64,000 nt of DNA. Source: Macrostomum lignano. Taxonomy: Eukaryota. Position numbers and translations under genes: made by a program. This document shows positions 16,830 to 53,853 of the stretch, piece after piece. The notes beneath the pieces were generated by a model that saw only the letters and a list, made by a program, of their open reading frames with translations, ran no database searches and was not told where the DNA came from. The DNA is taken from assembly GCA_002269645.1 (NCBI GenBank), contig NIVC01000215.1, forward strand, positions 248,001 through 312,000, written 5' to 3'. Position 1 is the stretch's first letter, and every line of letters begins with the position of its first letter.

Positions 16830-17455
<626 letters not shown>

Positions 17456-19827: not shown

Positions 19828-20612
<785 letters not shown>

Positions 20613-20626
20613 GTTCGTTAATCTGT

Positions 20627-26957: not shown

Positions 26958-27146
26958 AGCACCAGGGGTTTAAGCACCAGGGGATTTAGAACCAGGGGCT
27001 TTAGCACCAGGGGCGCCAGCACTAGGGGCGCCAGAACCAGGGGCGCCAGCACCAGGGGCGCTAGCACCAGGGGCGCCAGCACCAGGGGCGCTAGCACCAG
27101 GGGCGCCAGCACCAGGGGCGCCAGCACCAGGGGCGCCAGCACCAGT
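26958..27146 (+). repeat. 15-bp minisatellite
   Basis: AGCACCAGGGGCGCC units; left units read GGGGCTTTAGCACC. Confidence 0.95.
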
Positions 27147-29479: not shown

Positions 29480-30199
29480 AGCTTTGTTGCAGGGCTTTGC
29501 AGAGGCGCGGTTTCAATCCAAATGCAACTGAGTTCCCCACTGGTACCACCCCATGCAGTGCTCATGGGCATGAATACGCGCAATGAGGCCAGAAAATATG
29601 TTATGCTTTGTTGCCAAGGTAACACAATTGGTTTCTGGGGAGGGGGAGAGAATGCTTCCAATAGATTAATCGATAAACTGGATGGTCTACAGTTAGCTGC
29701 GCAAAATTTTTTGGACAATTATATTTCCTGGACTGTACATTGACCGTGGGGATGCTAACAGCTGAGGTTGAGACGAGAGCCCAACTCTCACGCCAACACC
29801 CATCATTATTGGGGGGGGGGTGTTAAAACTTTTGAGATGATTTTTGAGCCTAATTAAATATCCCTAGCTCTCTGATTATATGGCATGTGTGATGAGATTC
29901 TGCTCAGTCATCAAGTTAGATAAGTTTTTATCGTTATTAGCCAACCTGTCGCTTATGGCCGCTGGCTACACTCCTTTTTAATGAGCATGCAGGCTACCCA
30001 TTAGCTATAGCGGTCTGAGCTTGCGTGAACAACATACAGCAGGCAGAATGGGGAGACTCCAACGGTTTTAATTATAACGACTTTTAACGGACTCGCCTTG
30101 TCCAAGTCTCGGCATTTGCCCTGGAGGACTATCTTGAGATATACATGTTGATGCTATGTACACTGGTATGATCGAGAGCCGATCCCGAAGCAACAGAGT

Positions 30200-30545
30200 T
30201 TGCATGTGTACATGTACAATTGTGTAAGTGTGCATGTGTACATGTACAATTGTGTGTAAGTGTGCATGTGTACATGTACAATTGTGTGTAAGTGTGCATG
30301 TGTACATGTACAATTGTGTGTAAGTGTGCATGTGTACATGTACAATTGTGTGTAAGTGTGCAAGTGTACATGTACAATTGTGTGTAAGTTTGCATGTGTA
30401 CATGTACAATTGTGTAAGTGTGCATGTGTACATGTACAATTGTGTGTAAGTGTGCATGTGTACATGTACAATTGTGTGTAAGTGTGCATGTGTATATGTA
30501 AAATTGTGTGTAAGTGTGCATGTGTATATGTAAAATTGTGTATGT
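30200..30545 (+). repeat. 32-bp minisatellite
   Basis: TGTGCATGTGTACATGTACAATTGTGTGTAAG units. Confidence 0.95.
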
Positions 30546-31773
30546 GTGTGCAGCTGTCGTTTTTCGAGTTGCATTGATTTGCGTAACTCAAGATCGGGCT
30601 CATAGTTGACGTTAAATTGCCCCATTCTATATGGCTTCCCCATGAGGCTGGCAGCTGCGCACACTCGCTGACCGTTAAACAAAAGTTACTCATAACTGCT
30701 GTATTTTAAGTCAATTTTGCATGAAAATTAAGTTTTACATTTTGATTTGCAAAATTCTAAAGGTCGCGTGTTCTTAAAACTGCGATGATGACCGAGCGGT
30801 TGATGACATAAATAGATTGAATGACACAGAGGTCTCTGTCAGAGAGGTCCGCGGTTTTATACCATGCAGGTTGGTCGAGGTCCAGTTTATTACAGTAGTA
30901 CATGTACACGTACTGTATTTGTACAGGAAATTTAATTTGCCTCCGAAAACTTTCAAAATCGTTGAGTTTCACGTCCTGTTATTCTAGTGGTCCTTATAGT
31001 ACATGCAGACGAGTTATAATCGTGTGTCATGCTTCAAAAAGAACGCAATATATATATATATTATATACATGCCAGCTACAATATAATGATCGACGTCGCC
31101 GCGAGGTCGATCGACGTAATTTCGACGTCTAAAGTAGGGACTCGCTTACAATGTAAATTTACATTGTACCGACGTTCAGCCGACGTATGAAGTCGTTATC
31201 CGGCGATGTCATGTAAAAATAAATATTGGCCAACGACGTCGATAGAAATCGGAAACCGTCGGCCGATGTCGCTGACGTCGGATTGCTAGCTGTACGGAAT
31301 GCATTACAGTACTGTAAATGAAATCGATTTCTTAAAAGGGGGTGGCAAATACACCAACCTATTGCCTATTAGGGAGAGGTGAAAGCCGTTTTAATTGGGG
31401 TTTTAATTTCTTGGATGTGGTTTTCTACAATGCAGTCAAATTCGTCAAATATGTCAAATATAAATGCTAAAATTAAATATTTTAGTTCAAAGTAAAAGTC
31501 TAGCATTACTTGACAGACTTTTATAAAATTATTAACTGTTTATTTTTCTGATAGTTTTTATATTATTGTTTTTATTCTTGTACACATTGCAAAATATATT
31601 TGGAATTGCCTTTTTCCGAGAACCGAACTGGAAAGTGTCGATTGGCCTACAAACAGCTCAGTTTAGTTTAGGCCTAGTCTATATGTGCAGGTATCCTCTT
31701 TAATAAGGATCGTTATTCGTTAATAAGTGTACGTCTTCAAAATTTTTCATATCTACTATACAATAAACAAGTC

Positions 31774-35694: not shown

Positions 35695-37981
35695 CTAATC
35701 GCAGAATAAAGTTTCCACCGTCTCTACCATTGAATTTCGTTGCGTTTTTTTGAACAGCCCAACAAATTTTCGCCAGTAGCGCAAAAGATCTGCAAACATT
35801 TGCCAGATGAAAATTATGTGATCGAACCGGGTCAATTGGTGCACCAAATCGAAGTTGGCCGCGATGCTGTTGAACTCGTTAGACACGTAGGCGATGAGGA
35901 AGTTCTGTATGTTGATGGTGACTATCAGAACGAACATCGTGTGCAGCATGGCTGTTGAAGGTCGAGCCTGGGACAAGTTGGCCGTGTTGACGAAAATCCT
36001 CAGTGGCGAGTAGAACACGGAGAAGTGCGACTCGAACTCGGCCTTGTCGAAGTCGACCATGAAGAAGAGCGTGCCGAACACAAAGTAGGCCCAGATGAGG
36101 AACAGGGGCACGGCCGCGATGAACCGGCTGAACATCTTGCGAAAGCAGATTCCCAGGAAAGCGAGTCGTTTAAACCTCAACTCGAAACCGCCGGTGAAGC
36201 AAAGCATGGCGAAGAACATGTACATCACAGCGGAGCCTTCTGTCACGTGTATAGCCCAGCTATTAGCATATCTTTTCGACCTGTCGAATACAAAGCCGGT
36301 GCAGTCGAGGGAGCTCATAAGCAACATTGAGCCAATCAGATGCTGCAAGCCACAAATAAGCATTGCCGCCATTGAGACAGGGATGATTTCGTTCCTGACG
36401 AAGTACTCACCCCGGACTTTAAACCGGCTATCAATGCGGTACAGAGGAGATCTTTTTGCCAGACTAAATTTTGCTACTCCAAAAAGCAAAGCTAAAAACT
36501 TAATAAAAAGAATGCAGGCAATAACATATTGATTGATGATGATATTTGACACCACATTCCTCCTAGTAGCGCAGTAGAAGTAGATTGGCGATGTCTTCAC
36601 GCACTCAGCGCCTCGAGATCCGTTTTTCAGGAACCTGACGAGGTTATCTGAGCGGCAGGCACTTCGCACAGCATCTTCATTTCTGGCATTTGAACTATTT
36701 TCATTTGCGTTCATATTAGGGAGAAATTCTTCTTTAATTTCATTTGCAAAGTCATCGAAGCCTTTGTCCAATTCATAAGCATGCTGAGCCATCGCGACAA
36801 TCATTTTGAAGTTAAATGACAACGGAGTCAGCTGAAAAAGCAAAAATCCAAAAAACATCGACACTGCCAAGTATGTCCATCTCATATCCAGGTAAATTAT
36901 ATTAATCCACTTGTCAACAAGAAGGCCAGCCTGCATCAGGTTCGATCTTCTCAGCGCCGGCACCTGCTGCATTCGAGTTTCGTTCAGCATTAGAATCGGA
37001 GTCTTGCCTCTTCTGACCCCGGATGTCATGTCATATTCCGATAGGTTGTACTTTTTATACACTCGAGTGCCTGTCAAGTGTTCTTCAATCTTGATGTAGT
37101 TGTCCACTTCAGCAATTTTTTGGAATGTGCTGTACGCCCCGATTTGCATAGCGAACTCAATTGGTCTCAGGCCGGCTTTGTTCTCCATCAGGCAGAGCGC
37201 GTGAAGAAACGATTTGGGCTGCCTGTGGGTGTCGAAAAGAATGGGAATCATCTGATTGGTAATGCAAACAATAAAAGGCTTTTGAAAACTTGTTGCAATC
37301 TAGATATTTCAATAAACAGCTAGCTAGATAAACAGCCGTCTAGATTGAAATCAATTTAAATCGGACTCCTCGGAATGAACTCCAGATGGCTCACTCTGTC
37401 CCGACTGGCAAGCCGCAGTATCCGGCCGCTGTCTCCTTGTCGCAGCTGCAGTTGGGCTCACCGACCTCGGCCAGGATTTTGAACGCGCCCGACTCGAACT
37501 CGTCCAGCAGCTGCAGCTCCGCCTCGGACGGCTCGCCGCCTCGCCGACCCTCTCGCAGGACTCGAGCCTTGGCCAGCGAGTGCAGAAGGTTGCTGCCGTC
37601 TGCATCGTCCAGAACGGCGAGCGACTTCCAGCAGCAACAGTCGGCCAGAGTCTTTCTGACCAGGAATTCCAGAGTTTGCCCAGCCGAGTAGTGAACTGCC
37701 AGGTGGTGCATCCGGCCGGATTCCGTCTCTGCATCGCTGCTGCTGGGCATGTGGAATGTCAAGCGGTGGTGGAGCAACCGATCTGGTGGAATTTGAGCCA
37801 ACTCGAGCTCTGCTGCCAGCTTTTCAGGCTGGTCTCTGCGGATGAGAGCAGCCAGAGAAAGAGAAAGTCGGTTGTCCAGCACACCGCTATCATCGACAGA
37901 ATCCTGCTCTGGAAGCCTTGAGCCGGACTCCGAATCTTCCTGTGTCGCAGGAGCTACACGTATTTGCTTTGACGCAGCCAT
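35695..37981 (-). CDS. TRPV-like cation channel, copy A, about 704 aa; exons 37981-37395 and 37222-35695
   Basis: Phase-2 junction GA|GTGAG...CCCACAG|G; ankyrin-like MHHLAV and DGSNLLHSL; ENKAGLRPIEFA and KYNLSEYD parallel TRPV N..GLTP and LYDL..ID; six hydrophobic segments; S6 NIQNFLIAYVS parallels MLNLLIAMMG. Confidence 0.8.
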
Positions 37982-38753
37982 AATCTGTCGAATATTTTAT
38001 GCCTATAAATTATTCGACAGAGAGCATGTCTTTCTGGACCGAACGAAGCTTTTTTAAAAGCTGCTTTGTTTGTCTAATAGCCAATTAATTCTACGATTTT
38101 TCCTGCTAACTCAATTTGATTAGCGAAATAGGAATGGAAAAGACATATTTGACCATTTTGCCTAACCTCGTGTGTGTGGTCCATACTGCAGTCACCAATC
38201 ATTAATTTATTAGCCTTTCGTTCAATATTTGCGTATCTTCTATGAATACGAATCGAGGCGCTTGGGTCAATAAGGCGTATATTGTTTGAGCTGATCTTTA
38301 GCTACAGTGGCAATGCATGCAACTCTTATTTTGACCAAATGGATTTCTGTCTACTCAACAGATTTGGCTACGCACTGCAATCTTCTAAGCATCATGGATA
38401 TTTGACTACAGTACGATTATGTAAATTCATGGGGTCATATCATAAACCCGAAATATCATAACTCCGAAAACCAAAATAGTGTTGGACATTGCTAGAAATT
38501 TCGGAGCTACATGTATGATATTACGGGTTTATGATGGAAAGCGCTTTTCGGAGTTGTGATTTTTCGGGTTTCTGATGCCCCCTCCCCGAATAAGTCATGA
38601 CTAATCGGTAATCGCCTAGACAACTTGGTATTAATTTGATATATGAGAGACAGCTAATTGTAATCCTTATTCATTTTAACTGTTCCAGTTAGCACTGATC
38701 TGCATACAATTTAAGTACTTTAGTACCCATAAATAATTTCCACGTCGGGCACC

Positions 38754-41293
38754 TGTTGTACTTTGAGGCAGCGTGGCCAAATGAACAAGGTGCGAGAAGC
38801 GATTGCAGGGTAGAAAAAGTCACAAAGGCTTGAAAGGCCTGTGCGCACTTATATTATAGTTAAACTAACTAGCATGATTCAGCAAACATCAAAACCCCCC
38901 ACCCGGCCTAGGCCGCTCTGGGCAGACAGACAAACCCCCAGCCAATTAGAACGCAAGAACTCTAGGCGGCGTGCAAGCCGCATACACAACAACATCCCCC
39001 TTCGAAAAAGCAACGACAAGCACGACGCTGAAGTTGTTCAACAGGAGGCGGTCGTTCCATCGGTGGATGCGCAGCGACATGGGCCCGGTGCCTTGGGTAC
39101 ACAGCAGTGCCTTGAGAGCCGAATGGTCAGTGCGCAAAGTCAGCCGTCTGCCGTAGGTGTAGATGTGCCAGCGCTCGAGAGACCAGATGCACACCAGAGC
39201 CTCTTTCTCGCTAGCTGAGTATCTGGACTCCGTTGGCGTCAGTGCTCGCGAGGCGTAGGCCACTGGCTTCTCGTTGGCCTACGCGTTGAAGCAGCACAGC
39301 GCCAAGCGCGAAGTCAGACGCGTCACACTCGACGATGGTGTCAGCGTTGCAGTCGAAGTGGCTTAGCACCGCGGACTCGTCAGCTGTTGCCTGAGCTCGG
39401 CAAAAGCAGCGTCACACTCGCTCGTCCAGTGAAAGACAGTGTCCTTGAGCAGCTCTCGTAGTGGTCTCGCTGTCTTGGCGAAGTCAGGTATGAACTTGTC
39501 GAAGTAGTTGACGGTTGACAGGAATGACGAGACGGTGCCTACTGCCGGGGTCCAGCTTGCAGAAGATCTGCGCGCCTGCAAACTCTGCGGCCAGCTCCTC
39601 CTGGGTCGGCACGGGAAACTTATCCGGGTTGATCGCTTGGTTGCAGTTGCGCGGATCAACGCACAGTCGCAGGTCGCCATTCTTCTTAGATACGACTAGA
39701 TTGGACACCCAGGGAGAGGCATCGATCTTCTCGATGACACCTGCGGCCTCCATCTTGCTTAGCTCGTCCTTCACGCGGTCCTGAAGTGCCAGCGGCACCC
39801 GGCACAACGGCTAAACTGTTGGTGTCACATTCTGGCGCAGCTGTGGTCGATGGCAAAACTTCTTGGCCATACCGATACCGTCAAAGATTCCCGTTAACTC
39901 TCCAGCGATATCATCGATGTTGCTGATTGCGTTGACTCTGATTGAGAATCCCAGCTTGTCCATGCCGTCGAGACCGAGGATGTTGGCACCTCGTCGTGCA
40001 ATGAAGAAGCGGCAGATGGCGGACTTGCCGCGGTGCACAACGCACAGCTCTGCTATCCCGAGCACGTCAATTGCAATTAGCTTCGGAGTCGGCGTGATGA
40101 CCGGTTGCTTCGGCAAGCGTTTCACAGTCTTCTCGTTGATGATGTTGATTCTTGAGCTCGTATCCAATAGGAGCCCTGACGTCGATGTCAGCAATGCTGC
40201 TCGTCGCGAAGTTAAGAAGCGACGTTTCATATTCTACTGTAGATACTTCGAATGGCTCATCATCTTCGTCCTTTACAGTGCGAAGCTGGCGTCGCTGTCG
40301 GCAGCAAGCTTTGAAGTGTCCGACCTTGTCGCAGTGCAAGCAGGTCTTGTCCTTCGCTGGACACTCTAAGGCGCGGGCGGCATGCCCGGCCCTCCCGCAG
40401 TTGCCGCACCGTGACTCTGCGCCGGATTTCTGCGGTGCCGCATGCTTGGGTCCCTTGCGTGATGGCGTACGCTGGCTGACCTTCTGGATGCGGGACTCGT
40501 CCTTGTCGCTCTTGCTGTCGCGCAGCTTCTTGGCGTCGTTGATTGCAGATTCGACTTGAATCGCCAATGCCATCGCCCTATCCAGCTCGAGCTCCGTCTC
40601 AATGAGCAGTCGCTCTCGAATGCGCGGCGAATGGGTCTTCTCGATGATCTGGTCCCGGATCATCTGGTCATGGAGAGCGCCGTATTCGCAGTCTGCCGCG
40701 AGTTCTCGGAGGGCGTCGACGAACTGGCTAACTGGCTCGCCTGGCGCGCGACTTGAACTTGTAGCGGTTCTGATTGTGCTGTGCGACTGACCGAAGATCG
40801 TTTTCAGTGCAGCCACGAGCTTGTCAAACGTATCAACGCTCTTCGTGGGCAGATTCCTCAGCGCGTAGACTCTCTGGCCTTCTTCGCCTAGTAGATGAAA
40901 GAGAATCGCCTTCTTTCGTGCATCAAATGCTTCATTTAGGTCCAAGGCCTCCAGGTAAATCTTGAATCCTTCGATCCAACGATTCCAAGGCGTGTGTGGC
41001 TGTCCTGGGTGGGCGAGAAACACGCGTGGCTCGGAAATGCTCAGACTCGTCGCCATGTTGTACTTTGAGGCAGCGTGGCCAAATGAACAAGATGCGAGAA
41101 GCGATTGCAGGGTAGAAAAAGTCACAAAGGCTTGAAAGGCCTGTGCGCACTTATATTATAGTTAAACTAACTAGCATGATTCAGCAAACATCAAAACCCC
41201 CCACCCGGCCTAGGCCGCTCTGGGCAGACAGACAAACCCCCAGCCAATCAGAACGCAAAAACTCTAGGCGGCGTGCAAGCCGCATACACAACA
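38754..41293 (-). mobile_element. Ty3/Gypsy LTR retrotransposon, non-autonomous deletion derivative, 2540 bp
   Basis: 238-bp LTRs (38754-38991, 41056-41293; TG...CA; 3 differences); 5-bp TSD GCACC at 38749 and 41294; PBS TGGCGACGAG; PPT GAAGGGGGA near 38995-39003; gag, degenerate protease, partial RT and RNase H; no integrase. Confidence 0.96.
40067..41056 (-). CDS. Gag protein of the Gypsy element
   Basis: Open frame from MATSLS; Q..GE.V..FV..LRELA..CEYG...MIRDQII motif; two zinc-knuckle-like motifs (CGNCGRAGH...C, CLHCDKVGHFKAC). Confidence 0.85.
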   Translation of the reverse strand: MATSLSISEPRVFLAHPGQPHTPWNRWIEGFKIYLEALDLNEAFDARKKAILFHLLGEEGQRVYALRNLPTKSVDTFDKLVAALKTIFGQSHSTIRTATSSSRAPGEPVSQFVDALRELAADCEYGALHDQMIRDQIIEKTHSPRIRERLLIETELELDRAMALAIQVESAINDAKKLRDSKSDKDESRIQKVSQRTPSRKGPKHAAPQKSGAESRCGNCGRAGHAARALECPAKDKTCLHCDKVGHFKACCRQRRQLRTVKDEDDEPFEVSTVEYETSLLNFATSSIADIDVRAPIGYELKNQHHQREDCETLAEATGHHADSEANCN

Positions 41294-41845
41294 GCACCAT
41301 CACTTTGTTATATTCTTGATTACTAGATAGCTATAAGAGAAATTTGTGACTGGATGTGAGATCTGAGAAACAGACACACACGTATCTGATCGGTATCGGC
41401 GTCTGATCACATTGCATAGACCCTCTCTGTTCGGACATGAAAAATTGGTGCTTGCATGTTCACTTGCGTCTAAACCAATCATCGGATCAAGTGCAATTGC
41501 GCGTACTTGCAGCCTTGCCACTTCATCTACCATAGACTAAGAGAAGAACAATGAAATAAAAGTTGTCATTTCAATATAGATTCGAATTCATCTTCGAGTC
41601 TCTCTTAGCTCGCAAATGCTACAATTATATTGCATACGAGCTAGCTACAAATGCTTCATGCTTGATAAACGCAGCAACTGTCTGTGGCATTCAAAGCTGA
41701 TTTGACGTTAATACGTTGTCATATCTCCTTCCAACTAAATAGTTGCAGACATTTTTGTGCTTGTCATCATAAAGTCTAAATTAAGAGTAAGAGTGATTTT
41801 GTTATCAAATCTAATAATTAAGTAATTCAGGAGAGCAACAATCCG

Positions 41846-44800
41846 ATGCATTCTGATTCGGTTGAAGACGATCCCATTAAGACGATGGCTTCAAAGTGCC
41901 CGATGAAAGATTCGCTGAACAAAGTCGAGTCACGAAGTGCCGTCCGCGGTTATGTGAGCGACGATCCACAACTTCCGGAACGGGAGCTCGCGTTTTACCT
42001 AGTCGCCATGCTGTCCATTGTCATCTATGCTGGCTACGGGTTTTACGTCACCTATGGGCACGACATGACGCAAAGTGAGCTGTTAATTGAAAATCGAAGA
42101 TGACACACTCCGAACTACTTGTAGCTAGTTCTTGCAGTTGGAAAATATTCTGATGATTAGGTTCTCTGGACTCGTATTTTGTAAGCTGCAAACGAATGCT
42201 GTTGACGCTACAATTTTTAGATCTTCCGGTTCAAGCATTAAAACGCGGTTGGATGAGAGATTACAAGGTAATCTAACTTTATAATTGTGTATTGATTTTT
42301 TCGTTATTACCAAATTTTGTTCCTCAAATTTATTCCACAGGACATTGTTGTTCACCCGATGTTTGAACAAGCGACTAACAACTGGCCTCAACTGACTCTG
42401 GCGTCTGCTGGTTTTCTCATAGTTAGCAAAGCGTCGCTGGCATTTGCGCCAATGAATGTCAGTCTCCTTTTTACTAAAGATCATAGTGTCATAAGTTCGC
42501 AAACAGAATAGACTGGAGAAAAAGCAGGCGGTGCTCAGTCTGAAACTCGGGTTACATTCTCGGGTACGTCAGTGGCCTTCAGCTGCACACACTTGAGCAG
42601 CTTGCTGGTGCAGTCAGCAAAGAATTCTTCGGGTGTCCTCTGTACCCCCTCTCGTAATAACTCTGTGCGGACAGGTTGCTGTAGTGCTTTCCCCACACGG
42701 TGGTTCCTCATCTCTAGGAGCAGTCAGTAATCGCTGCGAGCCAGGCCATCAGGTTTTGCGCCCATGAACAACGAACGTGTCATTCCCAGCTGCTTCCCCG
42801 ACAATGCGGTGAAAGAGATCTTCAGTGGAATGTCCAAGAAGTACTCAAACTGTCGAAGCTTCGATCTGCATCCAGCACCTGCTGTTCATGATGCACGTTT
42901 CTTACCATTGCAGTTTGATCGTTGCTGAGCAGCGCCAGTATACGCGCAGCATCCAAGCCGTCATCTAACCACTGAAGATACACTTTGACACCGTCTGTTC
43001 TGCTTTCGAAAGATGCTGCTTTGAAATTTAAAGTAGTTTGTAGAGAGGGTAAAATTGGGGTTTAGGTCACTATTTAATAAATCATCATTAAATGGCGGTT
43101 TATTTGTGTCTTGTGAAATCGAGCTGCCAGCTTTTGTCGGCGAACTTACGACATAATATTTTTAATATTTTTGGCACTTTCTAACGGCAGAAAAATCATA
43201 AACGTTGCTTACCATCGTACCAACCCTAGGTGCATCATCTGGCTTGCTCAATTTATACTCTGCTCATGATTAGCATCGCCCTGTCGTCCAAAGCTGCGTT
43301 CGCACTAGTCTTCCTGTACACTGTCTGCCTCTCCTTAGCCTACTTCTCTAATCCCGCTGTGTGGATCTTACCTAGCGCTCTGCTCTACTCTTTCAGTCGC
43401 GTAGAAGTGTCTGCAGTCCTGCTTTCTGCTCTGGAAATCCAGGATGATAAATTGAATACCTTTTCGGCAATGTCCAGCTACCTAATGTGCCGCCTGATCT
43501 CGCTTGGTCACACGTTGAGAACGGAGGTGAGTGAGCAGCCCTGTGGATTTAGGCAATATTTGCTCAACAATGTTCCTCTGAGTCTGGCCTACACTTTCTA
43601 CATGCCATACACGTGGTCCGGACCGATTCTCACTTTTGACGCGTTTCGCAAACAGCTGCAATCTCGCGGTCGTCGTGTTGAAATTGACAGCAATACTATT
43701 TCTGTTGTGGCATGGCGCGTGTGCCGCATGGTGCTGTGGTACTACGTTCTGGAGATGATCTATCACTACTTGCCAACGGGATCTTACCTGCTCACACTCC
43801 AACCCGATGTACCCATCGTGTACAAGCATATGTCCTTTTCTATCTACATACACGGTCAGAGCTTTATGCTTCTCTGCATTCAGTACTTCGGATGGCCAGC
43901 CGTCCTTGCTCTGCTCGATGGTGTTGAGCTGTTTCACTGGCCAGACTGCATCAGCTGGGTGTACAGCTACAGCATCATGTGGCGCGTGTTTGACCGAGGT
44001 TTGTTCTCAGTGATCCAGGAACACATCTACAGGCCTCTTGGAGGCAGTCGCCGGGGTCCATTGCGACAATTTTTAGCTCTGGTTGCTTCCTTCCTTTTTG
44101 TCTGCATCTTCCACGGCGACAGCGCGAGCAGTCGAGCCTGGGTGACGCTGAATGTGGTTCAGTTGGTGATGGAGCGGCTGATGATTTTTGTCTATTATAA
44201 ATATCTGAGATGCGCTGTTGTGAGTCAATTATTGCTTGTGCGGGATCTTATTTGGTTGCGTATGCATTGCATATACTCGTAAATACTTGCACCATCTTTC
44301 AGACTAAGTACCTGAGTCCTCAGAATGAGAAGCGACTCACTGGCTACGTCATCGCTTGGAATATGACAGTCTCCTGCGGCATAATCTTCTTCTTACTAGC
44401 CGGCACGAACGGCTTCATCATTTTTCCCGAGCTGCTGCTACTGCGCTCGATGAGTTCGCATAGTGAGTTTTGCTTTCACTAATTGTTGTCGACTGTCCAT
44501 CGGTGCTTTCGTACTAACTTACTAATTACTATTGAAAATATACTTTTCCTTGCTGTAATTTAGTAATATACAATATTAATAATTAAACTTTATTTTACGA
44601 GTAGTATTTCATATCAGTATAATAATTATTATTATATCGACCCGGCGGAAGTCGTGGTGGTCGCCCATGTCGGTGTACTTGGCTGATTTGCGGACCTCGA
44701 CCGAGGTGGCAGGTGACTTGGCCCAGGTGTGCGTGATAGTCGCGTCCCAAGCCAATGGCAGCCCGCTCTCAAGAGCCGCCACCGTGGCGCCGTCGAAGCG

Positions 44801-45544
44801 GCGAGAGTCCCGCGCGGAGAGGCCGGCTGGTTCGAGTACCGATGGAAAGCCGGTCTCCCCCAGGATGTCCCGGAGCCGCCAGTTAAGCTCGTCGTGTCGT
44901 CGGAAGCGCTCTACGCATTATGAGGGCATGTGAGGGTGTCGGTCCCCTAGGCCATCGAGTGGCTGGCGGCACTCGCACACTCCAGGTGCCGCAGTTTGCA
45001 GACCGCGAGCCGCAGGCTGACGATGATGGACAGCTCGATGTCCGAGGGGTGCGTGCCCTCACGGCTGTTCAGCAGACCGGTAACAAAAGCCGGCTGACTC
45101 CGGGGTGGAGGCAGAGTGCAGCCTGGCCACGTCCCTGGGCTCCGCGAGGTTGGCAGGCAGCGCCTGATGGCGTGTGCGGAAAAGCGGCTCTTGCCAGGAG
45201 CGGGCGGCAGGGGGCCCGCAGGTTCCGAGGGAACTCGGGGGTTGTCTGGTAGAGCTCATTGACGAGTGGCGCTGTAGCAGCTGCATGGGATAGGAAGGCT
45301 GGCAGGGCGAGGTCTGGGGGTGCACAGATTCTAATGCTTCTCAGACCCGTTGGCAGAGAGGCCTGCAGCCAATCTCGAGGATCATTTAAAATAGTGAATA
45401 TTATTTTCAATTTCAGCTCCATTGTGGCACCTGTTGACCTTCCAATTCGGCACTTATTGCGCTGTACAAATGGGTCGCTACTTTGAGGTCAAGCTAAAGC
45501 CGAAGTTGTGCGATAAAGCCAAGAAGGTCAAGACTATGGATTGA
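41846..45544 (+). CDS. MBOAT acyltransferase, HHAT/Rasp-like, copy 1, 556 aa; exons 41846-42074, 42221-42267, 42341-42457, 43230-44219, 44303-44462, 45417-45544
   Basis: Phase-compatible junctions, no internal stop; WSGPILTF, PDCISW..SY..MWRVFDRGL..IY.PLGGS and catalytic FVCIFHG; intron 3 donor is the weaker GTCAGT. Confidence 0.88.
44640..45388 (-). mobile_element. Degraded non-LTR retrotransposon fragment (zinc knuckle + restriction-like endonuclease) in MBOAT-1 intron 5
   Basis: Across frameshifts reads WLQASLP...DLALPAFL, CEC...DGLG.H, RHDELN, LEPAGL..RDSRRFDG.T...LAWDATITHTWA...EVRKSAKY; absent from the matching MBOAT-2 intron. Confidence 0.8.
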
Positions 45545-46664
45545 TGAGGCATGCTGGTTACCATAGAAACTTCGATACGGATCTACTTTAATAGTAGTGC
45601 TAAAATACTATTTCATTCAAGCTGACAGTTTGAAAAAATCTGCGAGCCAGGTTAATCAAATATTTTAAAACTAAAATACTGCTATCCATATGCCAACCAA
45701 TCTATAAATCAATCACTACTATGACTTTTTGTATATCTGTCAGCTATTGTTGCGAATAAAAGTTTGGAAATTAAATAGATAGTATCTTAGTCTACAATAA
45801 TTTAAAGCGAAATGTTATTGTATCTATTTGTTATTGTAACTCATGCAGCAAGCTGACGTGGAAGTTTCCGATGTCTATCGAAGTCACTCGCAAAAAAGTA
45901 CTTTTACATTTTACCGACGTACGAGTATAACGTCTGGTGGAATACGGAGGAGGACGGAGGAGTATACTGCATGTTGATGTGTTCCTTATTACCAGACTCT
46001 TTCTGTAATCAAAGAACACTCACTTCTAGCTATTTCTAGGCAACCCAGTAGTCGACTGCAGGTATTTAATTACCTTAATCCGGATTAGCAGTGTCTTCCT
46101 TTGTCTTCTGAGTAGTTCTCGTTTGTAGATCTCGTCTGTGGATCTCTCAGCTGATCTCGTAGATCAGGCGCCTTGATTCTTCAGTTGCTCTGGTCCTGGT
46201 TTTCTTGTACTTCCGATGAAGTGACTTCCGGCCGGTGTCTGCAGTCAGGACTAATCAGAGGCCTCGTATCAATGGGTACCCTGCGCCGAATAGCGGTTTC
46301 TCCTTAGCCTTCTCCTTCTAGTAGTGCCTCTATGCACTCTAGGTAATGCTCCGGTAATCTCTAATAGATCCTCTAAGATCTATTAGGGTAGTCCTTCGGG
46401 CGACTACTGCCAATGGAGTCTCAAATGGACTCAAGAGTCTCAACAGACTCTAACACTATAACAATAGTGAGTCGACTCAACAACAACTGGCGCAAATGAG
46501 AGAGGCTTACCGCAACAACTTGACCGAGTCTCGATTCACTTGGTGATCAGGAAGTCCTCCTAAGGCTTCCTCTTCGGAGCTTCTCCTATCGTCGGGAGTT
46601 GGCTCCGGTACCGCTTTGGACCGCTTGTATTTATAGACGATTTTGCAGGCCAGAAATAGTAACA

Positions 46665-46822
46665 TGATTCACGTGTTGCCCTATAAGGGGTAACATGATT
46701 CATCGCGTGGTTATAAATAGTAACATGACTTATAGTGCTGCCATAAATAGTAACATGATTCATTCTGCTGCTATGAATAGTAACATGAATCATTCTGCTG
46801 CTATAAATAGTAACATGATTCA
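46665..46822 (+). repeat. About 29-bp minisatellite, about 5 copies
   Basis: AAATAGTAACATGATTCATTCTGCTGCTA-like units. Confidence 0.8.
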
Positions 46823-47619
46823 TCGTTAAAGTTTAGGTGCGCATGCGTGCACTTACTTACTCATAGTAGCATCCTACGATTGACTCATTTTACTTATGCG
46901 GGAGATATAACACTCTACAATATGTTACTAGAATTTGTGGCTTAAGTTATTTACAGTTTATATACCACTAAGTTGAGTGGCTATTAGAGTTCGTAGATAT
47001 AATAATACTTGTAACTTGTATTCTGTTATGATAGAGGTCGATGATTGCTTCAGTTAAGTTAAAAAAACTTTTGGTTCAATGTGTGTTTTCCAATCCGAAC
47101 CCAAATGACGCGTTTAAAACCGGAAGCCCACAAAACTAACTGGAACTAGACCTAAATAAAACTGATTTTATAGCTAATCGGAAGAAATAACGCTTTTCTG
47201 TTGCTTGTACGAGCGACGTTTTCCGTTTTAATAAGTGCACAAGTATCATACTTTTGGGTAAGAAGCTATAGCTAGTTTTATTTAGTAGACTAATCTACGA
47301 GGTGTTACTAATTTATGCTGCCTTTCTTGTCCTGCCTAAACAGTTATCCCACGCACGTCTTTGGCCCGAAGTTTTAACTAATTATAGTCTAGCTAAATTC
47401 AGTTAAATTATTAGAATGTGGTACACAGCAACTGTCAGACTTCGCTGACCTTGAAAGCTTTCCTCCAAGAACAGTCTATGGTGAAAATTGAGCGGCCACT
47501 TAATAAGCAGTGCTTCTTTTGTTCCAAGTTTTTGTATCTTAATTTTTTAACTAGCTACAGATTCTGCTATATTAAAACTGTTTTAAGCTTACTAACATAG
47601 CACCACTGTAGTTGCCAAG

Positions 47620-50600
47620 ATGCAATCTGGAGAGGTTGAAGACGATCCCATTAAGTCGTCGGCTTCAAAGTGCCCGATGAAAGATTCCTTGAACAAATTC
47701 GAGTCACGAAGTGCCGTCCGCAGTTATGTGAGCGACGATCCACAACTTCCGAAACGGGAGCTCGCGTTTTACCTGGTCGCCATGCTGTCCATTGTCATCT
47801 ATGCTGGCTACGGGTTTTACGTCACCTATGGACTCGACATGACGCGAAGTGAGATTAACTTTCGATCTTTCTAGTTTTGCTTTTTTGTAACAATAGTATT
47901 ACTCTTAGTTTTATACATCTTTCCAATCCATGGGCATAATTTGCTATTATAGTTCTAGCAGTAGGACCATGCAGTCTTGATAGCAGAAAGCTCCTCTAGA
48001 CCTATATGGCGCATGCTACATCTACAGTCTTGAAACCAGTTTCTAGTTTATACCTCTACACGCCTTTATGCATATACATGAAGCATCTTATAGTGGCTTT
48101 CGCAGAGTGGCTTGCCCCTATATATAAATATTATACTCTTTAAAAACTACATACATGTAAAGCATGCAACCCGGTGCAGCTTTTCGCCGTTTGCCGGCGT
48201 ACCCGACGTCGAAGGACGTCACAAGCAAATATGTAGGTCTTCGCAGAAAAAAAACAGTACCTTATACGAACGTACGTTGGCCGAACGTTGATAAACGTCT
48301 GCCTGAAGTCGATGACGTCGTATTTCTGTACGGTTTACCAAGCTCGGCGAATGGCAAGATTTTAAATTTTGCGACGGCTTGGATCGACGTGAAGAATCCA
48401 TTGGTCGAAAAAGATATAGGGAAGGGGGCGCAAACTTGGGACACCAGATGCGCTCGTATTAACAAGTCCAGATTAGATAAAAAACATATACGCTTTTTAA
48501 CTTTTTAGACCTTCCGGCTGAAGCATTAAAGCCTGGCTGGATCAGAAAGTACAAGGTAAACTATAGATTGTCGCATTTGAAATTGCTGTAGGTTTTGTAC
48601 GACCATTACCATATTTCTTTGGCCAAATAGAATTGAATAAAAAAAATTAATCATCCTTAATCATCACACTTGCCCGACAGGACATCGGCGTTCAAGACTT
48701 GTTCGAGCGAGCGTCAAACAACTGGCCTAGGCTGGTTCTGGCTTCCATAGGCTTCCTGCTTGTTAGCAAAACCTCATTGGCTTTTGCACCAATCAATGTA
48801 GGTTGTAGAATTCAAAGTTTTACTTTCAAGTATGCGCCAGTTCACAAACATTTTTGCAATCAAATTTTAGGTACATTATCTAGCTTGCTCAGTCTATACC
48901 CTCGTAATGATTGGGATTGCCGTGTCACCAGAAGCGGTAGCTGCATTGGTCTTAATGTACGCTTTTTACCTCTGCATGGCCTACTTCTCGTACATTGGCG
49001 TATGGTTGTTCACTTGCACGATTCTCTACGGCTTCAGTCATGGCAGACTTGCCGCAGTCCTGGTTCCGGCACTCAATATTCAAGGTGAAACATTACCCAC
49101 TTTTTCCGCCATACTTTGCTACTTCCTCTGTCGCCTAATCTCGTTTGGTCACACATTGAGAACGGAGGTGAGTGAGCAGCCCTGTGGATTTAGGCAATAT
49201 TTGCTCAACAATGTTCCTCTGAGTCTGGCCTACACTTTCTACATGCCATACACGTGGTCCGGACCGATTCTCACTTTTGACGCGTTTCGCAAACAGCTGC
49301 AATCTCGCGGTCGTCGTGTTGAAATTGACAGCAATACTATTTCTGTTGTGGCATGGCGCGTGTGCCGCATGGTGCTGTGGTACTACGTTCTGGAGATGAT
49401 CTATCACTACTTGCCAACGGGATCTTACCTGCTCACACTCCAACCTGATGTTCCCATCGTGTACAAGCATATGTCCTTTTGTGTCTACCTTAATGGCCAG
49501 AGCTTTATGCTACTTTACATTCAGTACTATGGATGGCCAGCCGTCCTTGCTCTGCTCGATGGTGTTGAGCTGTTTCACTGGCCAGACTGCATCAGCTGGG
49601 TGTACAGCTACAGCATCATGTGGCGCGTGTTCGACCGAGGTCTGTTCTCAGTGATCCAGGAACACATCTACAGGCCTCTTGGAGGCAGTCGCCGGGGTCC
49701 ATTGCGACAGATTTTTGCTCTGGTAGTCTGCTTTGGCTTTATCTGCGCCTTCCACGGCGACACCGCAAACAGTCGGGCCTGGGTGACGCTGAATGTAGTT
49801 CAACTGGTGATGGAGCGGCTGATTACTTTTGTCTATTATAAACACATGAGGTGTTTTATTGTGAGTCAAACTACGTGTTTGTTTGTGCTTGTTTTTCTGC
49901 AACTAAAAATCCGTTGTGGGGCTATTTTGTCTACATAAGGGGTAAATGTGTACATGGGAATGCAAACGGAAAAGAAGATAAGGTATGTTATGCGTGAGGA
50001 TTTCCTAGGAATCCAGCTCTCGTTTTGACTCTTGACTACGGTAGCCCCAGCCTTCTCGCGTACAACGTATGACACTCCAAGTTCACTCTAACCGTAGGCG
50101 TAGTGCTTTCGGTAACGGTAGTGCCTGAGACAGGCAGGCGAATGTATCTCAAAGCTTTTCTACTCGTAATTTGCAGCAGATATTGTCTGGCCGACAAGCC
50201 GACGCATTCAAAAGTTAGCCGCTTACGACCGCTATAAGTAGGCCTACAGAGCCATGAACAGCTGGTGGATGGAAAAGCGGGGGTGGGGTGGCTGCGGGCT
50301 CCGGCCAATATGACATATTTCTTCCCAAATGACATGATAAATTGACTATGACCAAAGCTGACTTGCGTCATATAGTTTTATATCCACAAAGATGCATTCT
50401 GACGGGTCTACGAAATTTGCTTGCGGAAATTTGCTTGCCGAACTTTGCTTGCCGAGATTTGTCAGCCAAAGTTTTCTTGCGAAACCTTAAAGAACCTGCA
50501 AGCAAATTTCCTGCAAGCAAAGTTCGGCAGGGAAAATTCGGCAAGCAAACTTCCTGCAAGCAAAGTTCGGCAAGGAATATTCATCAAGCAAAGTTCGGCA

Positions 50601-51077
50601 AGCAAAGTTCCTGCAAGCAAACGTTGTACTCCCATTCTGAAATTTGCCCTGAGCCATAGCTACATGTAGTTGTGACCTTTTTTTAGACCAAGTACCTGAG
50701 TCCTCAGAATGAGAAGCGACTTACTGGCTACGTCATCGCTTGGAATATGACAGCCTCCTGCGGCATAATCTACTTCTTTCTAGGCGGCACGAAAGGCTTC
50801 ATCATTTTTCCCGAGCTGCTGCTACTGCGCTCGATGAGTTCGCATAGTGAGTTTTGCTTTTATTATTGTTGTCAATTGTCCATCGGTGCTTTGGTACTAA
50901 CTTATTAATTACCATAGAAAATGTTGAGTATTATTCTCAATTTCAGCTCCATTGTGGCACCTGTTAACTTTTCAATTCGGAACTTATTGCGCTGTACAAA
51001 TGGGTCGCTACTTCGAGGTCAAGCTGAAGCCAGCTCTGTGCAACAAGGCCAAGAAAGCCAAGGTCACCGCTGAGTGA
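47620..51077 (+). CDS. MBOAT acyltransferase, HHAT/Rasp-like, copy 2, 557 aa; exons 47620-47848, 48509-48555, 48681-48797, 48871-49860, 50687-50846, 50947-51077
   Basis: Same exon sizes and phases as copy 1 (229/47/117/990/160); catalytic FICAFHG; open throughout. Confidence 0.88.
50415..50625. repeat. Inverted array of short repeats inside an intron-4 insertion of MBOAT-2
   Basis: TTTGCTTGCCGAA units followed by reverse-complement TTCGGCAAGCAAA units; intron is 826 bp vs 83 bp in copy 1. Confidence 0.75.
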
Positions 51078-51536
51078 GACACGCGAATGGCTGAGACATA
51101 TTTTAGATACAATGTTACTAGGCACTACAGGTAATGTAATTTTAGTAGTCTTTTTTGTTTACTCTTGCCTACTTAAGAAGATGCATGCATGCTAAATCAG
51201 CTACCCTACTCTTTGCGTCCGCATAGTCTTGAAGTTTATAAAAAATTGTATAAACAAGAATAATTCTCCAATATATCAAATCAATAACAGTAACTTATTA
51301 CTTTTTGTTAAAATAGTCAGAATATCCTTGAAGAAACCGGTGCGAATATTTTGATCTGAATGGAAAATGTGTTTGCTTGTTTGTTATTTCATCAAGTTTT
51401 TAGTTTTTGTAAAAGGTCTGCCGGGATTCACCGTACGTACCTGCCTGCAGCAGTTTCCAGTTTGTATTTTGCACTATTCAAACATTCAGGGTGAATTTTA
51501 TAAACATTTAGAGATGTCTCTATGTGCACATCAGGT

Positions 51537-53853
51537 TTAAGCCATTCCGTCTTGTGGTTTTTCTAAATCAGCAAAAGAAATTTCCTTTGTTTCCACAAAG
51601 TAGCGCCGTTCTGTTTTGTAGAAATGGTCAACAAATCGGCGCCAATGCTTGAGAATGCCGCCCCACATTTGCCAGGTAACGGTTACGTGGTTGAACCGGG
51701 TCAATTGGTGCACCAAATCGAAGTTGGCCGCGATGCTGTTGAACTCGTTAGACACGTAGGCGATGAGGAAGTTCTGTATGTTGATGGTGACTATCAGAAC
51801 GAACATCGTGTGCAGCATGGCTGTTGAAGGTCGAGCCTGGGACAAGTTGGCCGTGTTGACGAAAATCCTCAGTGGCGAGTAGAACACGGAGAAGTGCGAC
51901 TCGAACTCGGCCTTGTCGAAGTCGACCATGAAGAAGAGCGTGCCGAACACAAAGTAGGCCCAGATGAGGAACAGGGGCACGGCCGCGATGAACCGGCTGA
52001 ACATCTTGCGAAAGCAGATTCCCAGGAAAGCGAATCGTTTGAACCTCAATTCGAAACCGCCGGTGAAGCAAAGCATGGCGAAGAACATGTACATGACAGC
52101 GGAGCTTTCCGTCATTATGGTTAACCAAGTGTTTGGGAATTTCTTCGCTCTGCCGAGTACAACATCCGTGCAGTCGAGCGATCTCATAAGCAACATTGAG
52201 CCAATCAGATGCTGCAAGCCACAAATAAGCATCGACACCATTGAGACAGTGATGAATTCGTTCCTGACGAAGTACTCACCCCGGAATTTAAGACGGCTAT
52301 CAATGCGGTACAGAGGACAACTTTGCGCTCGTATTGCCGCAGCCAGTCCAAACAGCAACATCGCCAACTGTGCGACTAGCAGAGCAACCATGGTATAGTG
52401 GTTGACAGAGATGTTCGCCATCACGTTTGCTCTGCTGACAGGGTAGAAATAAATTGGCGAAATCTTCAGATATTCATCTCCTCGAGATCCGTTACTGAGG
52501 TACCTGATGAGATTAGCCGGATAGCAGGCACTTCGCACTGCGTCTTCAATGTTGCTGATGTTTGAAACTATTTCGTTTCCATTCGTAATGAATTCTTCTT
52601 TAATCTTGCCTGCAAATTCGTTGAAGCCCTTTTCAAGTTCGTAGGCATGCTGCGCCATAGTGACAATCATGATAAAGTTCAACGACAGCGGAGTAAGTTG
52701 GAAAAACAGAGTCCCGTAGTAAACCTGCGCCAGCAGGTAAGTCCACATCAAGTCTCTGTACATCAAATCAATCCACTTGTCAACAAGAAGGCCAGCCTGC
52801 ATCAGGTTCGATCTTCTCAGCGCCGGCACCTGCTGCATTCGAGTTTCGTTCAGCATTAGAATCGGAGTCTTGCCTCTTCTGACGCCGGAAGTCATGTCAT
52901 ATTCCGATAGGTTGTACTTTTTATACACTCGAGTGCCTGTCAAGTGTTCTTCAATCTTGATGTAGTTGTCCACTTCAGCAATTTTTTGGAATGTGCTGTA
53001 CGCCCCGATTTGCATAGCGAACTCAATCGGTCTCAGGCCGGCTTTGTTCTCCATCAGGCAGAGCGCGTGAAGAAACGATTTGGGCTGCCTGTGGGTGTCG
53101 AAAAGAATGGGAATCATCTGATTGGTAATGCAAACAATAAAAGGCTTTTGAAAACTTGTTGCAATCTAGATATTTCAATAAACAGCTAGCTAGATAAACA
53201 GCCGTCTAGATTGAAATCAATTTAAATCGGACTCCTCGGAATGAACTCCAGATGGCTCACTCTGTCCCGACTGGCAAGCCGCAGTATCCGGCCGCTGTCT
53301 CCTTGTCGCAGCTGCAGTTGGGCTCACCGACCTCGGCCAGGATTTTGAACGCGCCCGACTCGAACTCGTCCAGCAGCTGCAGCTCCGCCTCGGACGGCTC
53401 GCCGCCTCGCCGACCCTCTCGCAGGACTCGAGCCTTGGCCAGCGAGTGCAGAAGGTTGCTGCCGTCTGCATCGTCCAGAACGGCGAGCGACTTCCAGCAG
53501 CAACAGTCGGCCAGAGTCTTTCTGACCAGGAATTCCAGAGTTTGCCCAGCCGAGTAGTGAACTGCCAGGTGGTGCATCCGGCCGGATTCCGTCTCTGCAT
53601 CGCTGCTGCTAGGCATGTGGAATGTCAAGCGGTGGTGGAGCAACCGATCTGGTGAAATTTGAGCCAACTCGAGCTCTGCTGCCAGCTTTTCAGGCTGGTC
53701 TCTGCGGATGAGAGCAGCCAGAGAAAGAGAAAGTCGGTTGTCCAGCACACCGCTATCATCGACAGAATCCTGCTCTGGAAGCCTTGAGCCGGACTCAGAA
53801 TCTTCCTGTGTCGCGGCAGCTACACGAATCAGTTTCGGTGCTGCCATCGTCAT
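51537..53853 (-). CDS. TRPV-like cation channel, copy B, about 714 aa; exons 53853-53261 and 53088-51537
   Basis: Paralogue of 35695-37981 with the same intron and motifs; open throughout. Confidence 0.8.

What the first reader, a model, noticed from the sequence alone, without database searches (positions are those of the whole stretch)
35695..53853. TRP paralogues are sharp mosaics: same ankyrin region and pore, different sensor
Seen by eye: A 36904-37960 vs B 52770-53826 (ankyrin region, whole intron, pre-S1) differ at under about 10 nt; A 35824-36236 vs B 51693-52105 (end of S4, S5, pore, S6) at about 4 nt; the S1-S4 block between them and the TRP helix/C-tail are heavily diverged, with abrupt borders at DKWI| and |MYMFF and LTRF|. 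Established: TRPV ligand pockets are built from S1-S4, the S4-S5 linker and TRP helix; the ARD and pore mediate assembly. Inference: gene conversion homogenises assembly and pore modules while sensor modules are kept distinct, allowing heteromers with different ligand specificity.
Basis: partly seen in the sequence, partly recalled or inferred. Interest (0 to 1): 0.8.

Follow-up and report, generated by a model that had tools for sequence, protein, structure and literature searches.

The report
Gene-converted TRPV-like paralogues in a flatworm
Two neighbouring ion-channel genes of the flatworm Macrostomum lignano are an old duplicate pair in which two stretches have recently been copied from one gene onto the other, a well-known process (gene conversion) shown here unusually cleanly; that it serves a modular sensor/pore function is not shown.

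Summary
Copy A (35695-37981, minus strand) and copy B (51537-53853, minus strand) differ at 8 of 1057 nt and 4 of 413 nt in the two blocks named. They are about 63% identical in the S1-S2 block between them, and their flanks cannot be aligned.

The 172-nt intron is identical. Synonymous differences affect about 2% of codons in the near-identical blocks and 46% of conserved codons in the diverged block, so protein-level selection cannot explain the pattern.

The window is Macrostomum lignano. UniRef holds a second A-type and a second B-type protein from another locus. In the ankyrin block, 7 amino-acid sites group (A,B) against (A',B') and none group by gene type. In the first 13 residues and in S1-S2, all informative sites group (A,A') against (B,B'). 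That is concerted evolution by interlocus gene conversion.

The proteins are divergent TRPV-like channels. The tract borders fall inside S4 and inside the TRP helix, not at domain edges. The neighbouring MBOAT paralogues show the same mosaic. Conversion is supported; "sensor modules kept distinct for heteromers" is untested. This is a known kind of event and of modest interest.

The parts
35695..37222 (-). Copy A, exon 2 (last ankyrin repeat, linker beta-hairpin, pre-S1, S1-S6, TRP helix, C-terminal strand; stop codon 35695-35697)
   Evidence: ORF. The acceptor cacccacag|G is inferred from the UniRef model P0001 junction GTE|QPKSF. AF2 model and TRPV fold matches.
37223..37394 (-). Copy A intron (172 nt, GTGAGC...CAG), identical to the copy B intron 53089-53260
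   Evidence: There are 0 differences in 172 nt.
37395..37981 (-). Copy A, exon 1 (N-terminal region and ankyrin repeats)
   Evidence: ORF. The family profile matches ankyrin repeats of TRPV and DARPins.
51537..53088 (-). Copy B, exon 2
   Evidence: ORF. The part of P0001 (UniRef A0A1I8H5B5) that exon 2 encodes matches copy B exactly, including the junction DKWI|DLMYRDLMWTYLLA.
53261..53853 (-). Copy B, exon 1 (the intron is 53089-53260)
36904..37948 (-). Homogenised tract H1 in A (B: 52770-53814): from codon 12 to DKWI, including the whole intron. 6 differences in 1045 nt (5 synonymous, 1 P/S). 582 nt (37163-37744) carry no difference.
   Evidence: The four-sequence test has 7 sites for (A,B)(A',B') and 0 for (A,A')(B,B').
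36448..36903 (-). Diverged block D1 in A (B: 52317-52769): S1, the long extracellular S1-S2 loop and S2. About 63% nt and 54% aa identity, with two in-frame indels.
   Evidence: Hand count: 37 of 81 conserved-residue codons carry a synonymous difference, and 9 of 25 fourfold sites differ. In one search all informative sites group A with A' and B with B'.
36299..36447 (-). Intermediate block I (B: 52168-52316): S2-S3 linker and S3. 10 differences in 149 nt, 7 of them amino-acid changing.
   Evidence: Helix 289-316 of the model.
36227..36298 (-). Diverged block D2 (B: 52096-52167): S3-S4 turn and N-terminal half of S4
35824..36226 (-). Homogenised tract H2 in A (B: 51693-52095): C-terminal half of S4, S4-S5 linker, S5, pore helix, filter (NTAN), S6 and the first 10 residues of the TRP helix. 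4 differences in 403 nt (3 synonymous, 1 L/F). 341 nt (35824-36164) carry no difference.
35695..35823 (-). Diverged block D3 (B: 51537-51692): distal TRP helix and C-terminal tail, including the C-terminal beta-strand (VETxE retained in both copies)
43230..44282 (+). MBOAT paralogue M1 (context). It has the same kind of mosaic with M2 (48907-49938), while M3 (59400-60440) is about 70% identical throughout.

Best explanation
A and B are old tandem paralogues of a divergent TRPV-like channel in Macrostomum lignano. They are direct repeats about 15.9 kb apart. They probably arose when a head-to-head TRP-MBOAT gene pair was duplicated.

Since then, non-allelic (interlocus) gene conversion has repeatedly copied sequence between them. 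It has happened in two tracts. One runs from codon 12 through the intron to the pre-S1 helix. The other runs from mid-S4 through the pore and S6 into the TRP helix.

The segments between and beyond these tracts are now too different (about 60-65% identity) to form the heteroduplex that conversion needs. These are the first 11-13 codons, S1-loop-S2, the S3-S4 turn, the distal TRP helix and tail, and both flanks. They behave as ordinary old paralogues, and the tract borders are sharp.

Shown: the mosaic, the silent-site contrast, the switch of phylogeny at the DKWI border, and the TRPV-like fold. Inferred: that divergence itself, with or without selection, sets the borders; that conversion post-dates the split of the M. 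lignano subgenomes; and that the duplicated unit held two genes.
For: 1. The intron (172 nt) is identical. H1 and H2 carry 8 synonymous differences in about 425 codons, against 37 of 81 conserved codons in D1. Fourfold sites differ at 9 of 25, giving dS of roughly 0.5 (hand count).
2. Flanks and both CDS ends are diverged or unalignable, so the pair is old rather than a recent copy.
3. Four-sequence test with UniRef proteins from a second locus of the same species (A' = P0054, B' = P0052). In the ankyrin block, 7 sites (Q/R, E/D, H/N, Q/R, A/T, D/S, M/V) unite A+B against A'+B', and none unite by gene type. In the N-terminal 13 residues (3 sites) and in S1-S2 (more than 30 sites) the grouping is by gene type.
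4. P0001 matches B exactly across the DKWI junction.
5. A-B divergence in the tracts (0.6-1.0%) is below the 1.9-2.4% reported between M. lignano subgenomes (PMC10733133).
6. MBOAT paralogues M1 and M2 in the same array have about 300 nt and 175 nt of near-identical core inside 70-75% flanks, while M3 is about 70% identical there. M2 and M3 share an exact 69-mer.
7. M1 vs M3 (69.6%) matches the A vs B diverged-block identity, as expected for one old two-gene duplication.
Against: - A' and B' are known only as partial predicted proteins from a draft assembly. No DNA was obtainable.
- No second-locus sequence covers the pore tract, so H2 rests on silent-site identity alone.
- I cannot tell whether the UniRef models come from an assembly independent of the window.
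- M. lignano assemblies are reported to be heavily chimeric between subgenomes.
- Synonymous and non-synonymous counts were made by hand, because the scripting machine was lost.
- The low-constraint N-terminal region is homogenised while S1-S2 is not. A purely neutral 'fast regions escape first' model does not predict this.
Confidence: 0.85

Rival explanations
1. Adaptive modular reading. Conversion is tolerated or favoured in the assembly and pore parts. Selection removes conversions that would erase copy-specific sensor segments. The two subunits can then co-assemble while differing in what they sense. This is an addition to the conversion mechanism, not an alternative to it.
For: - The escaped blocks include S1, S2, the extracellular S1-S2 loop, the N-terminal half of S4 and the distal TRP helix with the tail.
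- The probably low-constraint N-terminal 100 residues and the intron are homogenised although S1-S2 is not. This fits selection against conversion in S1-S2.
- Both gene types keep their own S1-S2 in the second locus.
- In the intermediate S3 block, 7 of 10 differences change the amino acid, against 2 of 10 in the homogenised tracts (one-sided Fisher about 0.035, hand calculation).
Against: - Borders lie inside S4 and inside the TRP helix.
- The S4-S5 linker, distal S4 and proximal TRP helix, which form ligand pockets in TRPV channels, are identical in the two copies.
- The escaped blocks coincide with the least conserved columns of the whole family (consensus), as expected without any special selection.
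- MBOAT neighbours show the same pattern.
- The rough dN/dS in D1 is below 1.
- A vs A' and B vs B' replacement rates in S1-S2 (5/81, 6/79) are not clearly above those in the ankyrin block (11/290, 14/290).
- There are no expression or assembly data.
Confidence: 0.2
2. Assembly or polishing artefact. The near-identical blocks result from collapsed reads or from short-read polishing that smeared one copy onto the other.
For: M. lignano is a neopolyploid with three subgenomes. Chimeric scaffolds make up 36% of the length of the Mlig_3_7 assembly (PMC10733133). Read-level evidence cannot be examined here.
Against: - Polishing cannot turn about 63% identity into 99%.
- The blocks still hold 12 scattered differences.
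- The second locus shows the same within-locus homogenisation with its own shared variants. Mis-mapping among four copies would blur all four rather than pair them by locus.
- P0001 reproduces the B junction.
- There are no N runs in the window.
Confidence: 0.04
3. Reverse history. A and B are a very recent duplication, and the diverged segments were pasted in later from more distant family members elsewhere in the genome.
For: A mosaic alone does not give direction. The family has other members in the species.
Against: - Promoter, 5' end of the CDS, C-tail and 3' flank are all diverged or unalignable. This is not expected for a recent 2.3-kb copy.
- Both A-type and B-type S1-S2 blocks pre-date the split of the two loci.
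- No third copy or donor lies in the window.
- The divergence matches that of the linked M1/M3 pair.
Confidence: 0.06
4. Purifying selection alone keeps the ankyrin and pore regions identical.
For: These regions are the most conserved in the family.
Against: The intron is identical (0/172), and synonymous sites are about 20 times less diverged than in D1. The tree topology switches at DKWI.
Confidence: 0.01

Closest known systems
Interlocus (non-allelic) gene conversion that produces mosaic divergence in tandem paralogues, e.g. Arabidopsis halleri HMA4 (bioRxiv 10.1101/2025.10.29.685298) and Tigriopus GOT1p1/p2 (PMC3728101). From my own knowledge: primate red/green opsins, RHD/RHCE, and the models of Teshima and Innan.
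   Same: Tandem copies in direct orientation; near-identical tracts that include an intron and silent sites; islands of high divergence with sharp borders; paralogues closer to each other than to their counterparts at another locus.
   Different: Here the contrast is extreme (under 1% vs about 37% divergence). The host is a neopolyploid flatworm in which the pattern is seen at two homeologous or duplicate loci, and two unrelated gene families in one array both show it. No population data are available.
TRPV / TRPVL channels (group I TRP; TRPV5/6, TRPV1-4, Nanchung-Inactive; TRPVL of cnidarians and annelids, PMC9242649)
   Same: N-terminal ankyrin repeats, linker beta-hairpin, six helices with a pore helix, the S6 motif NFLIA, a TRP helix, and a C-terminal strand predicted next to the linker sheet. 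The family profile hits TRPV6 at E = 1e-41, and all top fold matches are TRPV.
   Different: - Only 10-14% identity to solved TRPVs.
- The window proteins have no Pfam hit of their own.
- The TRP-helix tryptophan is His.
- The acidic filter residue (D in TIID of TRPV6; D or E in the invertebrate relatives) is Asn (NTAN).
- The extracellular S1-S2 loop is about 55 residues long, and the S4-S5 region carries a 6-residue insertion.
- Subfamily placement (TRPV, TRPVL or a new clade) was not resolved.

Membership tests
Interlocus gene conversion / concerted evolution | Within the tract, paralogues at one locus are more alike than each is to its counterpart at another locus or species | tested here: met
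   in the ankyrin block, 7 sites support (A,B)(A',B') and 0 support (A,A')(B,B'). This was tested for tract H1 only; no comparator exists for H2.
Interlocus gene conversion / concerted evolution | Phylogenetic signal switches along the gene at the tract borders | tested here: met
   grouping is by gene type in residues 1-13 and from the residue after DKWI onward, and by locus in between.
Interlocus gene conversion / concerted evolution | Silent sites and introns are homogenised as much as replacement sites | tested here: met
   intron 0/172. Synonymous differences occur in about 2% of codons in H1 and H2, against 46% of conserved codons in D1 (hand count).
Interlocus gene conversion / concerted evolution | Copies are close together on one chromosome | tested here: met
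   Both lie on the minus strand, about 15.87 kb apart.
Interlocus gene conversion / concerted evolution | GC enrichment of converted tracts (biased conversion) | tested here: inconclusive
   exon 1 is 55-70% GC, the pore tract 49-56%, and S1-S2 of A 35-51%. Amino-acid composition confounds this, and GC3 was not computed.
Interlocus gene conversion / concerted evolution | Formal tract detection (GENECONV or RDP) with outgroup DNA | not testable with these tools
   No DNA of A', B' or other Macrostomum species could be reached, and the scripting machine was lost.
TRP channel, TRPV-like | Six-helix channel fold with pore helix between S5 and S6 | tested here: met
   The AF2 model has pLDDT 82 and pTM 0.78. 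All 50 Foldseek matches listed are TRPV-family chains: TRPV1, 3, 5, 6 and the Nanchung-Inactive complex (probability 1.0, TM 0.43-0.53).
TRP channel, TRPV-like | Sequence homology to known TRPV | tested here: met
   Homology is transitive. Window exon 2 vs the Lineus protein P0002: E = 7e-17. The profile of A, B and 28 relatives vs TRPV6: E = 1.3e-41 over ARD to TRP helix. Directly, Pfam gives 0 hits and PDB phmmer gives none.
TRP channel, TRPV-like | N-terminal ankyrin repeat domain and linker beta-sheet joined by a C-terminal strand | tested here: met
   The profile matches TRPV ankyrin repeats and DARPins. The model has helix pairs at 13-47, a hairpin at 54-69 and a C-terminal strand at 508-514. 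Strand pairing itself was not inspected.
TRP channel, TRPV-like | TRP helix after S6 with a conserved Trp (TRP box) | tested here: inconclusive
   A helix is present at 467-500. The position aligned to the TRPV6 Trp is His in A and B, and variable in the relatives.
TRP channel, TRPV-like | Acidic residue in the selectivity filter | tested here: not met
   A and B have NTAN where relatives have NMVD, NMLD or NMIE and TRPV6 has TIID.
TRP channel, TRPV-like | Forms a cation-conducting tetramer | not testable with these tools
   Needs expression and electrophysiology.

The most novel reading that the evidence does not exclude
The diverged islands (S1-loop-S2, proximal S4, distal TRP helix and tail) are kept apart by selection against conversion in every subgenome copy. 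The shared ankyrin, S4-S5, pore and S6 core lets A and B co-assemble. The flatworm would then carry a natural 'domain-swap' pair of TRPV-like subunits that build heteromeric channels with two different sensor modules on one pore, and that pore lacks the usual acidic filter residue.
Probability: 0.15. Interest if true: 0.55.

Novelty: new member of a known kind. Interest (0 to 1): 0.3.

Why it matters
This is a clean, checkable case of concerted evolution confined to parts of a gene. It has three practical consequences.
- Trees or dS-based dating of this channel family in Macrostomum will be wrong unless converted tracts are masked.
- Short-read mapping and RNAi or in situ probes aimed at the ankyrin or pore region will hit both copies. 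Only D1 or the tail distinguishes them.
- If selection does protect the diverged islands, the pair marks which segments of a TRPV-like channel carry copy-specific function, and chimeras can test this.

It also documents a divergent TRPV-like clade in flatworms and other spiralians that Pfam does not recognise directly.

Tried and rejected
- Pfam and PDB sequence searches with the spliced protein A found nothing.
- The first word-indexed homology search found nothing.
- My first gene model used the first in-phase AG as acceptor. I replaced it after UniRef P0001 showed the GTE|QPKSF junction.
- The single-sequence AF2 model was useless (pLDDT 42).
- The scripting machine was lost. Sliding-window dS, GC3 and Fisher tests could therefore not be computed, and counts were made by hand.
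- A search for second-locus proteins covering the pore and tail found none.
- Lookup of DNA encoding A' found none.
- I looked for a third TRP copy or fragment in the window, in self-blastn and in ORFs of 60.8-64 kb. There is none.
- A literature search found no report of gene conversion in TRP channel paralogues with the terms used. That is not proof of absence.
- Purifying selection alone and the recent-duplication-plus-imports history were rejected for the reasons given under the rival explanations.


Full report
**Observation**

A 36904-37960 against B 52770-53826 gives 8 mismatches in 1057 nt. A 35824-36236 against B 51693-52105 gives 4 mismatches in 413 nt. Self-blastn of the window finds a single alignment, 35796-37981 against 51665-53847, at 89.7% over 2195 nt. 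It finds no other copy of this gene.

A MAFFT alignment of both loci with 300-nt flanks shows the full pattern on the coding (minus) strand:
- The 5' flank cannot be aligned.
- The first 33 nt of the CDS carry about 10 differences.
- A 1045-nt tract follows (H1, A 36904-37948) with 6 differences.
- D1 (A 36448-36903) is about 63% identical, with two in-frame indels.
- An intermediate block (I, 36299-36447) has 10 differences in 149 nt.
- D2 (36227-36298) is short and diverged.
- A second tract (H2, 35824-36226) has 4 differences in 403 nt, and 341 consecutive nt carry none.
- The tail (D3, 35695-35823) is diverged, and the 3' flank cannot be aligned.

The one correction is that S2-S3/S3 is not heavily diverged.

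**Gene models and organism**

Each copy has two exons. An exhaustive protein search with exon 2 of A returned UniRef proteins of Macrostomum lignano.

P0001 (A0A1I8H5B5) matches copy B exactly and reads ...PVGTE|QPKSF.... This fixes the donor at GA|GTGAGC and the acceptor at cacccacag|G, so the intron is 37223-37394 (172 nt) in A and 53089-53260 in B. The intron is identical in the two copies.

Other genes in the window fit an animal genome:
- a class-C receptor ligand-binding domain;
- an MFS transporter;
- a Mos1-type transposase;
- a gag-like ORF;
- three MBOAT genes.

**What the proteins are**

The window proteins have no Pfam hit and no direct sequence hit in PDB. They are related (E = 7e-17 to 1e-4) to 600-850-residue proteins of Lineus longissimus and of unnamed eukaryotic contigs. 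Those proteins carry Pfam Ion_trans and weak ankyrin matches.

A profile of A, B and 28 such relatives matches TRPV6, TRPV5, TRPV3, TRPV4 and TRPV2 at E down to 1.3e-41, from the last ankyrin repeats to the TRP helix. An AF2 model of exon 2 of A built on a 41-sequence alignment has pLDDT 82 and pTM 0.78. All 50 of its listed PDB fold matches are TRPV-family chains. The label 'TRP' is therefore justified as TRPV-like. The subfamily (TRPV, TRPVL or other) was not resolved.

In the model the borders fall as follows:
- I116|N117: end of the pre-S1 helix.
- G339|S340: the middle of S4, helix 319-353.
- F476|D477: ten residues into the TRP helix, 467-500.

H2 therefore contains distal S4, the S4-S5 linker, S5, the pore helix, the filter, S6 and the proximal TRP helix.

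**Is the identity due to conversion?**

*Silent sites.* H1 and H2 hold 8 synonymous and 2 replacement differences in about 425 codons, and none in the intron. In D1, 37 of 81 codons with a conserved amino acid carry a synonymous difference. That breaks down as twofold sites 19/41 and fourfold sites 9/25, for a dS of roughly 0.5 or more. These are hand counts. Protein-level constraint cannot explain the identity.

*Age.* Flanks and both CDS ends are diverged. The linked MBOAT genes M1 and M3 sit head-to-head with A and B respectively and are 69.6% identical, similar to D1. This points to an old duplication of a two-gene unit.

*Phylogenetic switch.* UniRef holds a second A-type protein (P0054) and a second B-type protein (P0052) of the same species. 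In the alignment:
- Residues 1-13 and everything after DKWI group A with A' and B with B' (3 sites and more than 30 sites).
- Between them, 7 sites (Q/R, E/D, H/N, Q/R, A/T, D/S, M/V) group A with B and A' with B', and none group by gene type.

This is the signature of concerted evolution, with conversion in at least one locus after the loci split. A' and B' are identical over 246 residues and differ only near the ends of the tract, so tract ends differ between loci.

*Timing.* The A-B distance in the tracts (0.6-1.0%) is below the 1.9-2.4% reported between M. lignano subgenomes (PMC10733133). This fits conversion after the genome duplication, although I cannot show that the second locus is a homeologue.

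**Is it specific to channel modules?**

It is not. The MBOAT paralogues M1 (43230-44282) and M2 (48907-49938) show the same picture. About 300 nt and about 175 nt of near-identity lie inside flanks of 70-75% identity, while M3 is about 70% identical across those cores. M2 and M3 also share an exact 69-mer that M1 matches with two mismatches. Conversion is thus a feature of this array.

The escaped blocks of the channel coincide with the least conserved columns of the family alignment. This is what a divergence barrier predicts without special selection.

Two observations lean the other way:
- The probably low-constraint N-terminal 100 residues and the intron are homogenised while S1-S2 is not.
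- In block I, 7 of 10 differences change the amino acid, against 2 of 10 in H1 and H2.

Both hints are weak. The rough dN/dS in D1 is 0.35-0.7.

**Rivals**

- *Assembly or polishing artefact.* This is unlikely. Polishing cannot create 99% identity from 63%. Twelve differences remain. The second locus has its own shared variants, and P0001 reproduces the B junction. Read-level proof is still missing, and these assemblies are known to be chimeric between subgenomes.
- *Recent duplication with imported divergent segments.* The unalignable flanks contradict it, as does the presence of both S1-S2 types at both loci.
- *Purifying selection alone.* The intron and the silent sites refute it.

**Comparison with what is known**

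Mosaic divergence caused by interlocus gene conversion, with 'islands' that persist, is well described. Examples are HMA4 in Arabidopsis halleri and GOT1 in Tigriopus. From my own knowledge, opsins and RH genes are further examples. I found no report for TRP channels with the terms searched. The finding is a new member of a known kind.

**Verdict**

Gene conversion is strongly supported (0.85). The functional reading, that sensor modules are kept distinct to allow heteromers, is untested and only loosely matched by the borders (about 0.15-0.2). Interest is 0.3.

Noticed in passing
window 43230-44282, 48907-49938, 59400-60440 (+): There are three tandem MBOAT-family genes. M1 and M2 are a sharp mosaic: about 300 nt and 175 nt are nearly identical inside 70-75% flanks. 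M3 is about 70% identical throughout, except for an exact 69-mer shared with M2 (49579-49647 = 60120-60188) that M1 (43938-44006) matches with 2 mismatches. This is probably a micro-conversion tract.
   Followed up: partly
window 35960-35975 (A) and 51829-51844 (B), approx.; protein motif NTAN: In both copies the filter position that is Asp or Glu in the invertebrate relatives (NMVD, NMLD, NMIE), and Asp in TIID of TRPV6, is Asn. The TRP-helix Trp position is His. Ion selectivity or even conduction may be unusual.
   Followed up: partly
window 38754-38994 and 41056-41296, with ORF 40067-41125 (-): A pair of 241-nt direct repeats (98.3% identical, 2.3 kb apart) brackets a gag-like ORF with a CCHC zinc knuckle. 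This is probably an LTR retroelement remnant inserted between copy A and M1.
   Followed up: no
window 24565-25713 (-): An intact-looking Mos1/mariner-type transposase ORF (HTH_48 plus Transposase_1 and DDE_3 matches).
   Followed up: no
window 12341-13813 (-) and 3316-4623 (+): A long exon encodes an ANF_receptor ligand-binding domain (class-C GPCR or glutamate-receptor type, E = 7e-57), and there is an MFS transporter ORF. A 330-aa antisense ORF (3127-4119) overlapping the MFS gene is probably spurious.
   Followed up: no
window 1433-2020, 9462-9751, 10628-11149, 15792-16424, 16826-17455, 19828-20627, 30197-30552, 58384-58848 (also 26950-27144): There are many minisatellite arrays with periods of roughly 98, 60, 54, 66, 51, 52, 32 and 64 nt. 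One is 99.8% homogeneous (16826-17455). The 58.4-kb array has a related copy at 26950-27144.
   Followed up: no
window 37400-37900 vs 36450-36900: There is a strong GC contrast inside copy A: 55-70% in exon 1 and 49-56% in the pore tract, against 35-51% in the diverged S1-S2 block. Copy B's S1-S2 is less AT-rich (40-52%). This could reflect GC-biased conversion or only amino-acid composition.
   Followed up: partly
UniRef A0A1I8FAF8 (P0004), relative to window 37351-37734 (-): This public M. lignano gene model mixes the true frame with the +1-frame ORF of exon 1 (MQRRNPAGCTT...). It appears to be a frameshifted prediction of a copy of this gene.
   Followed up: no
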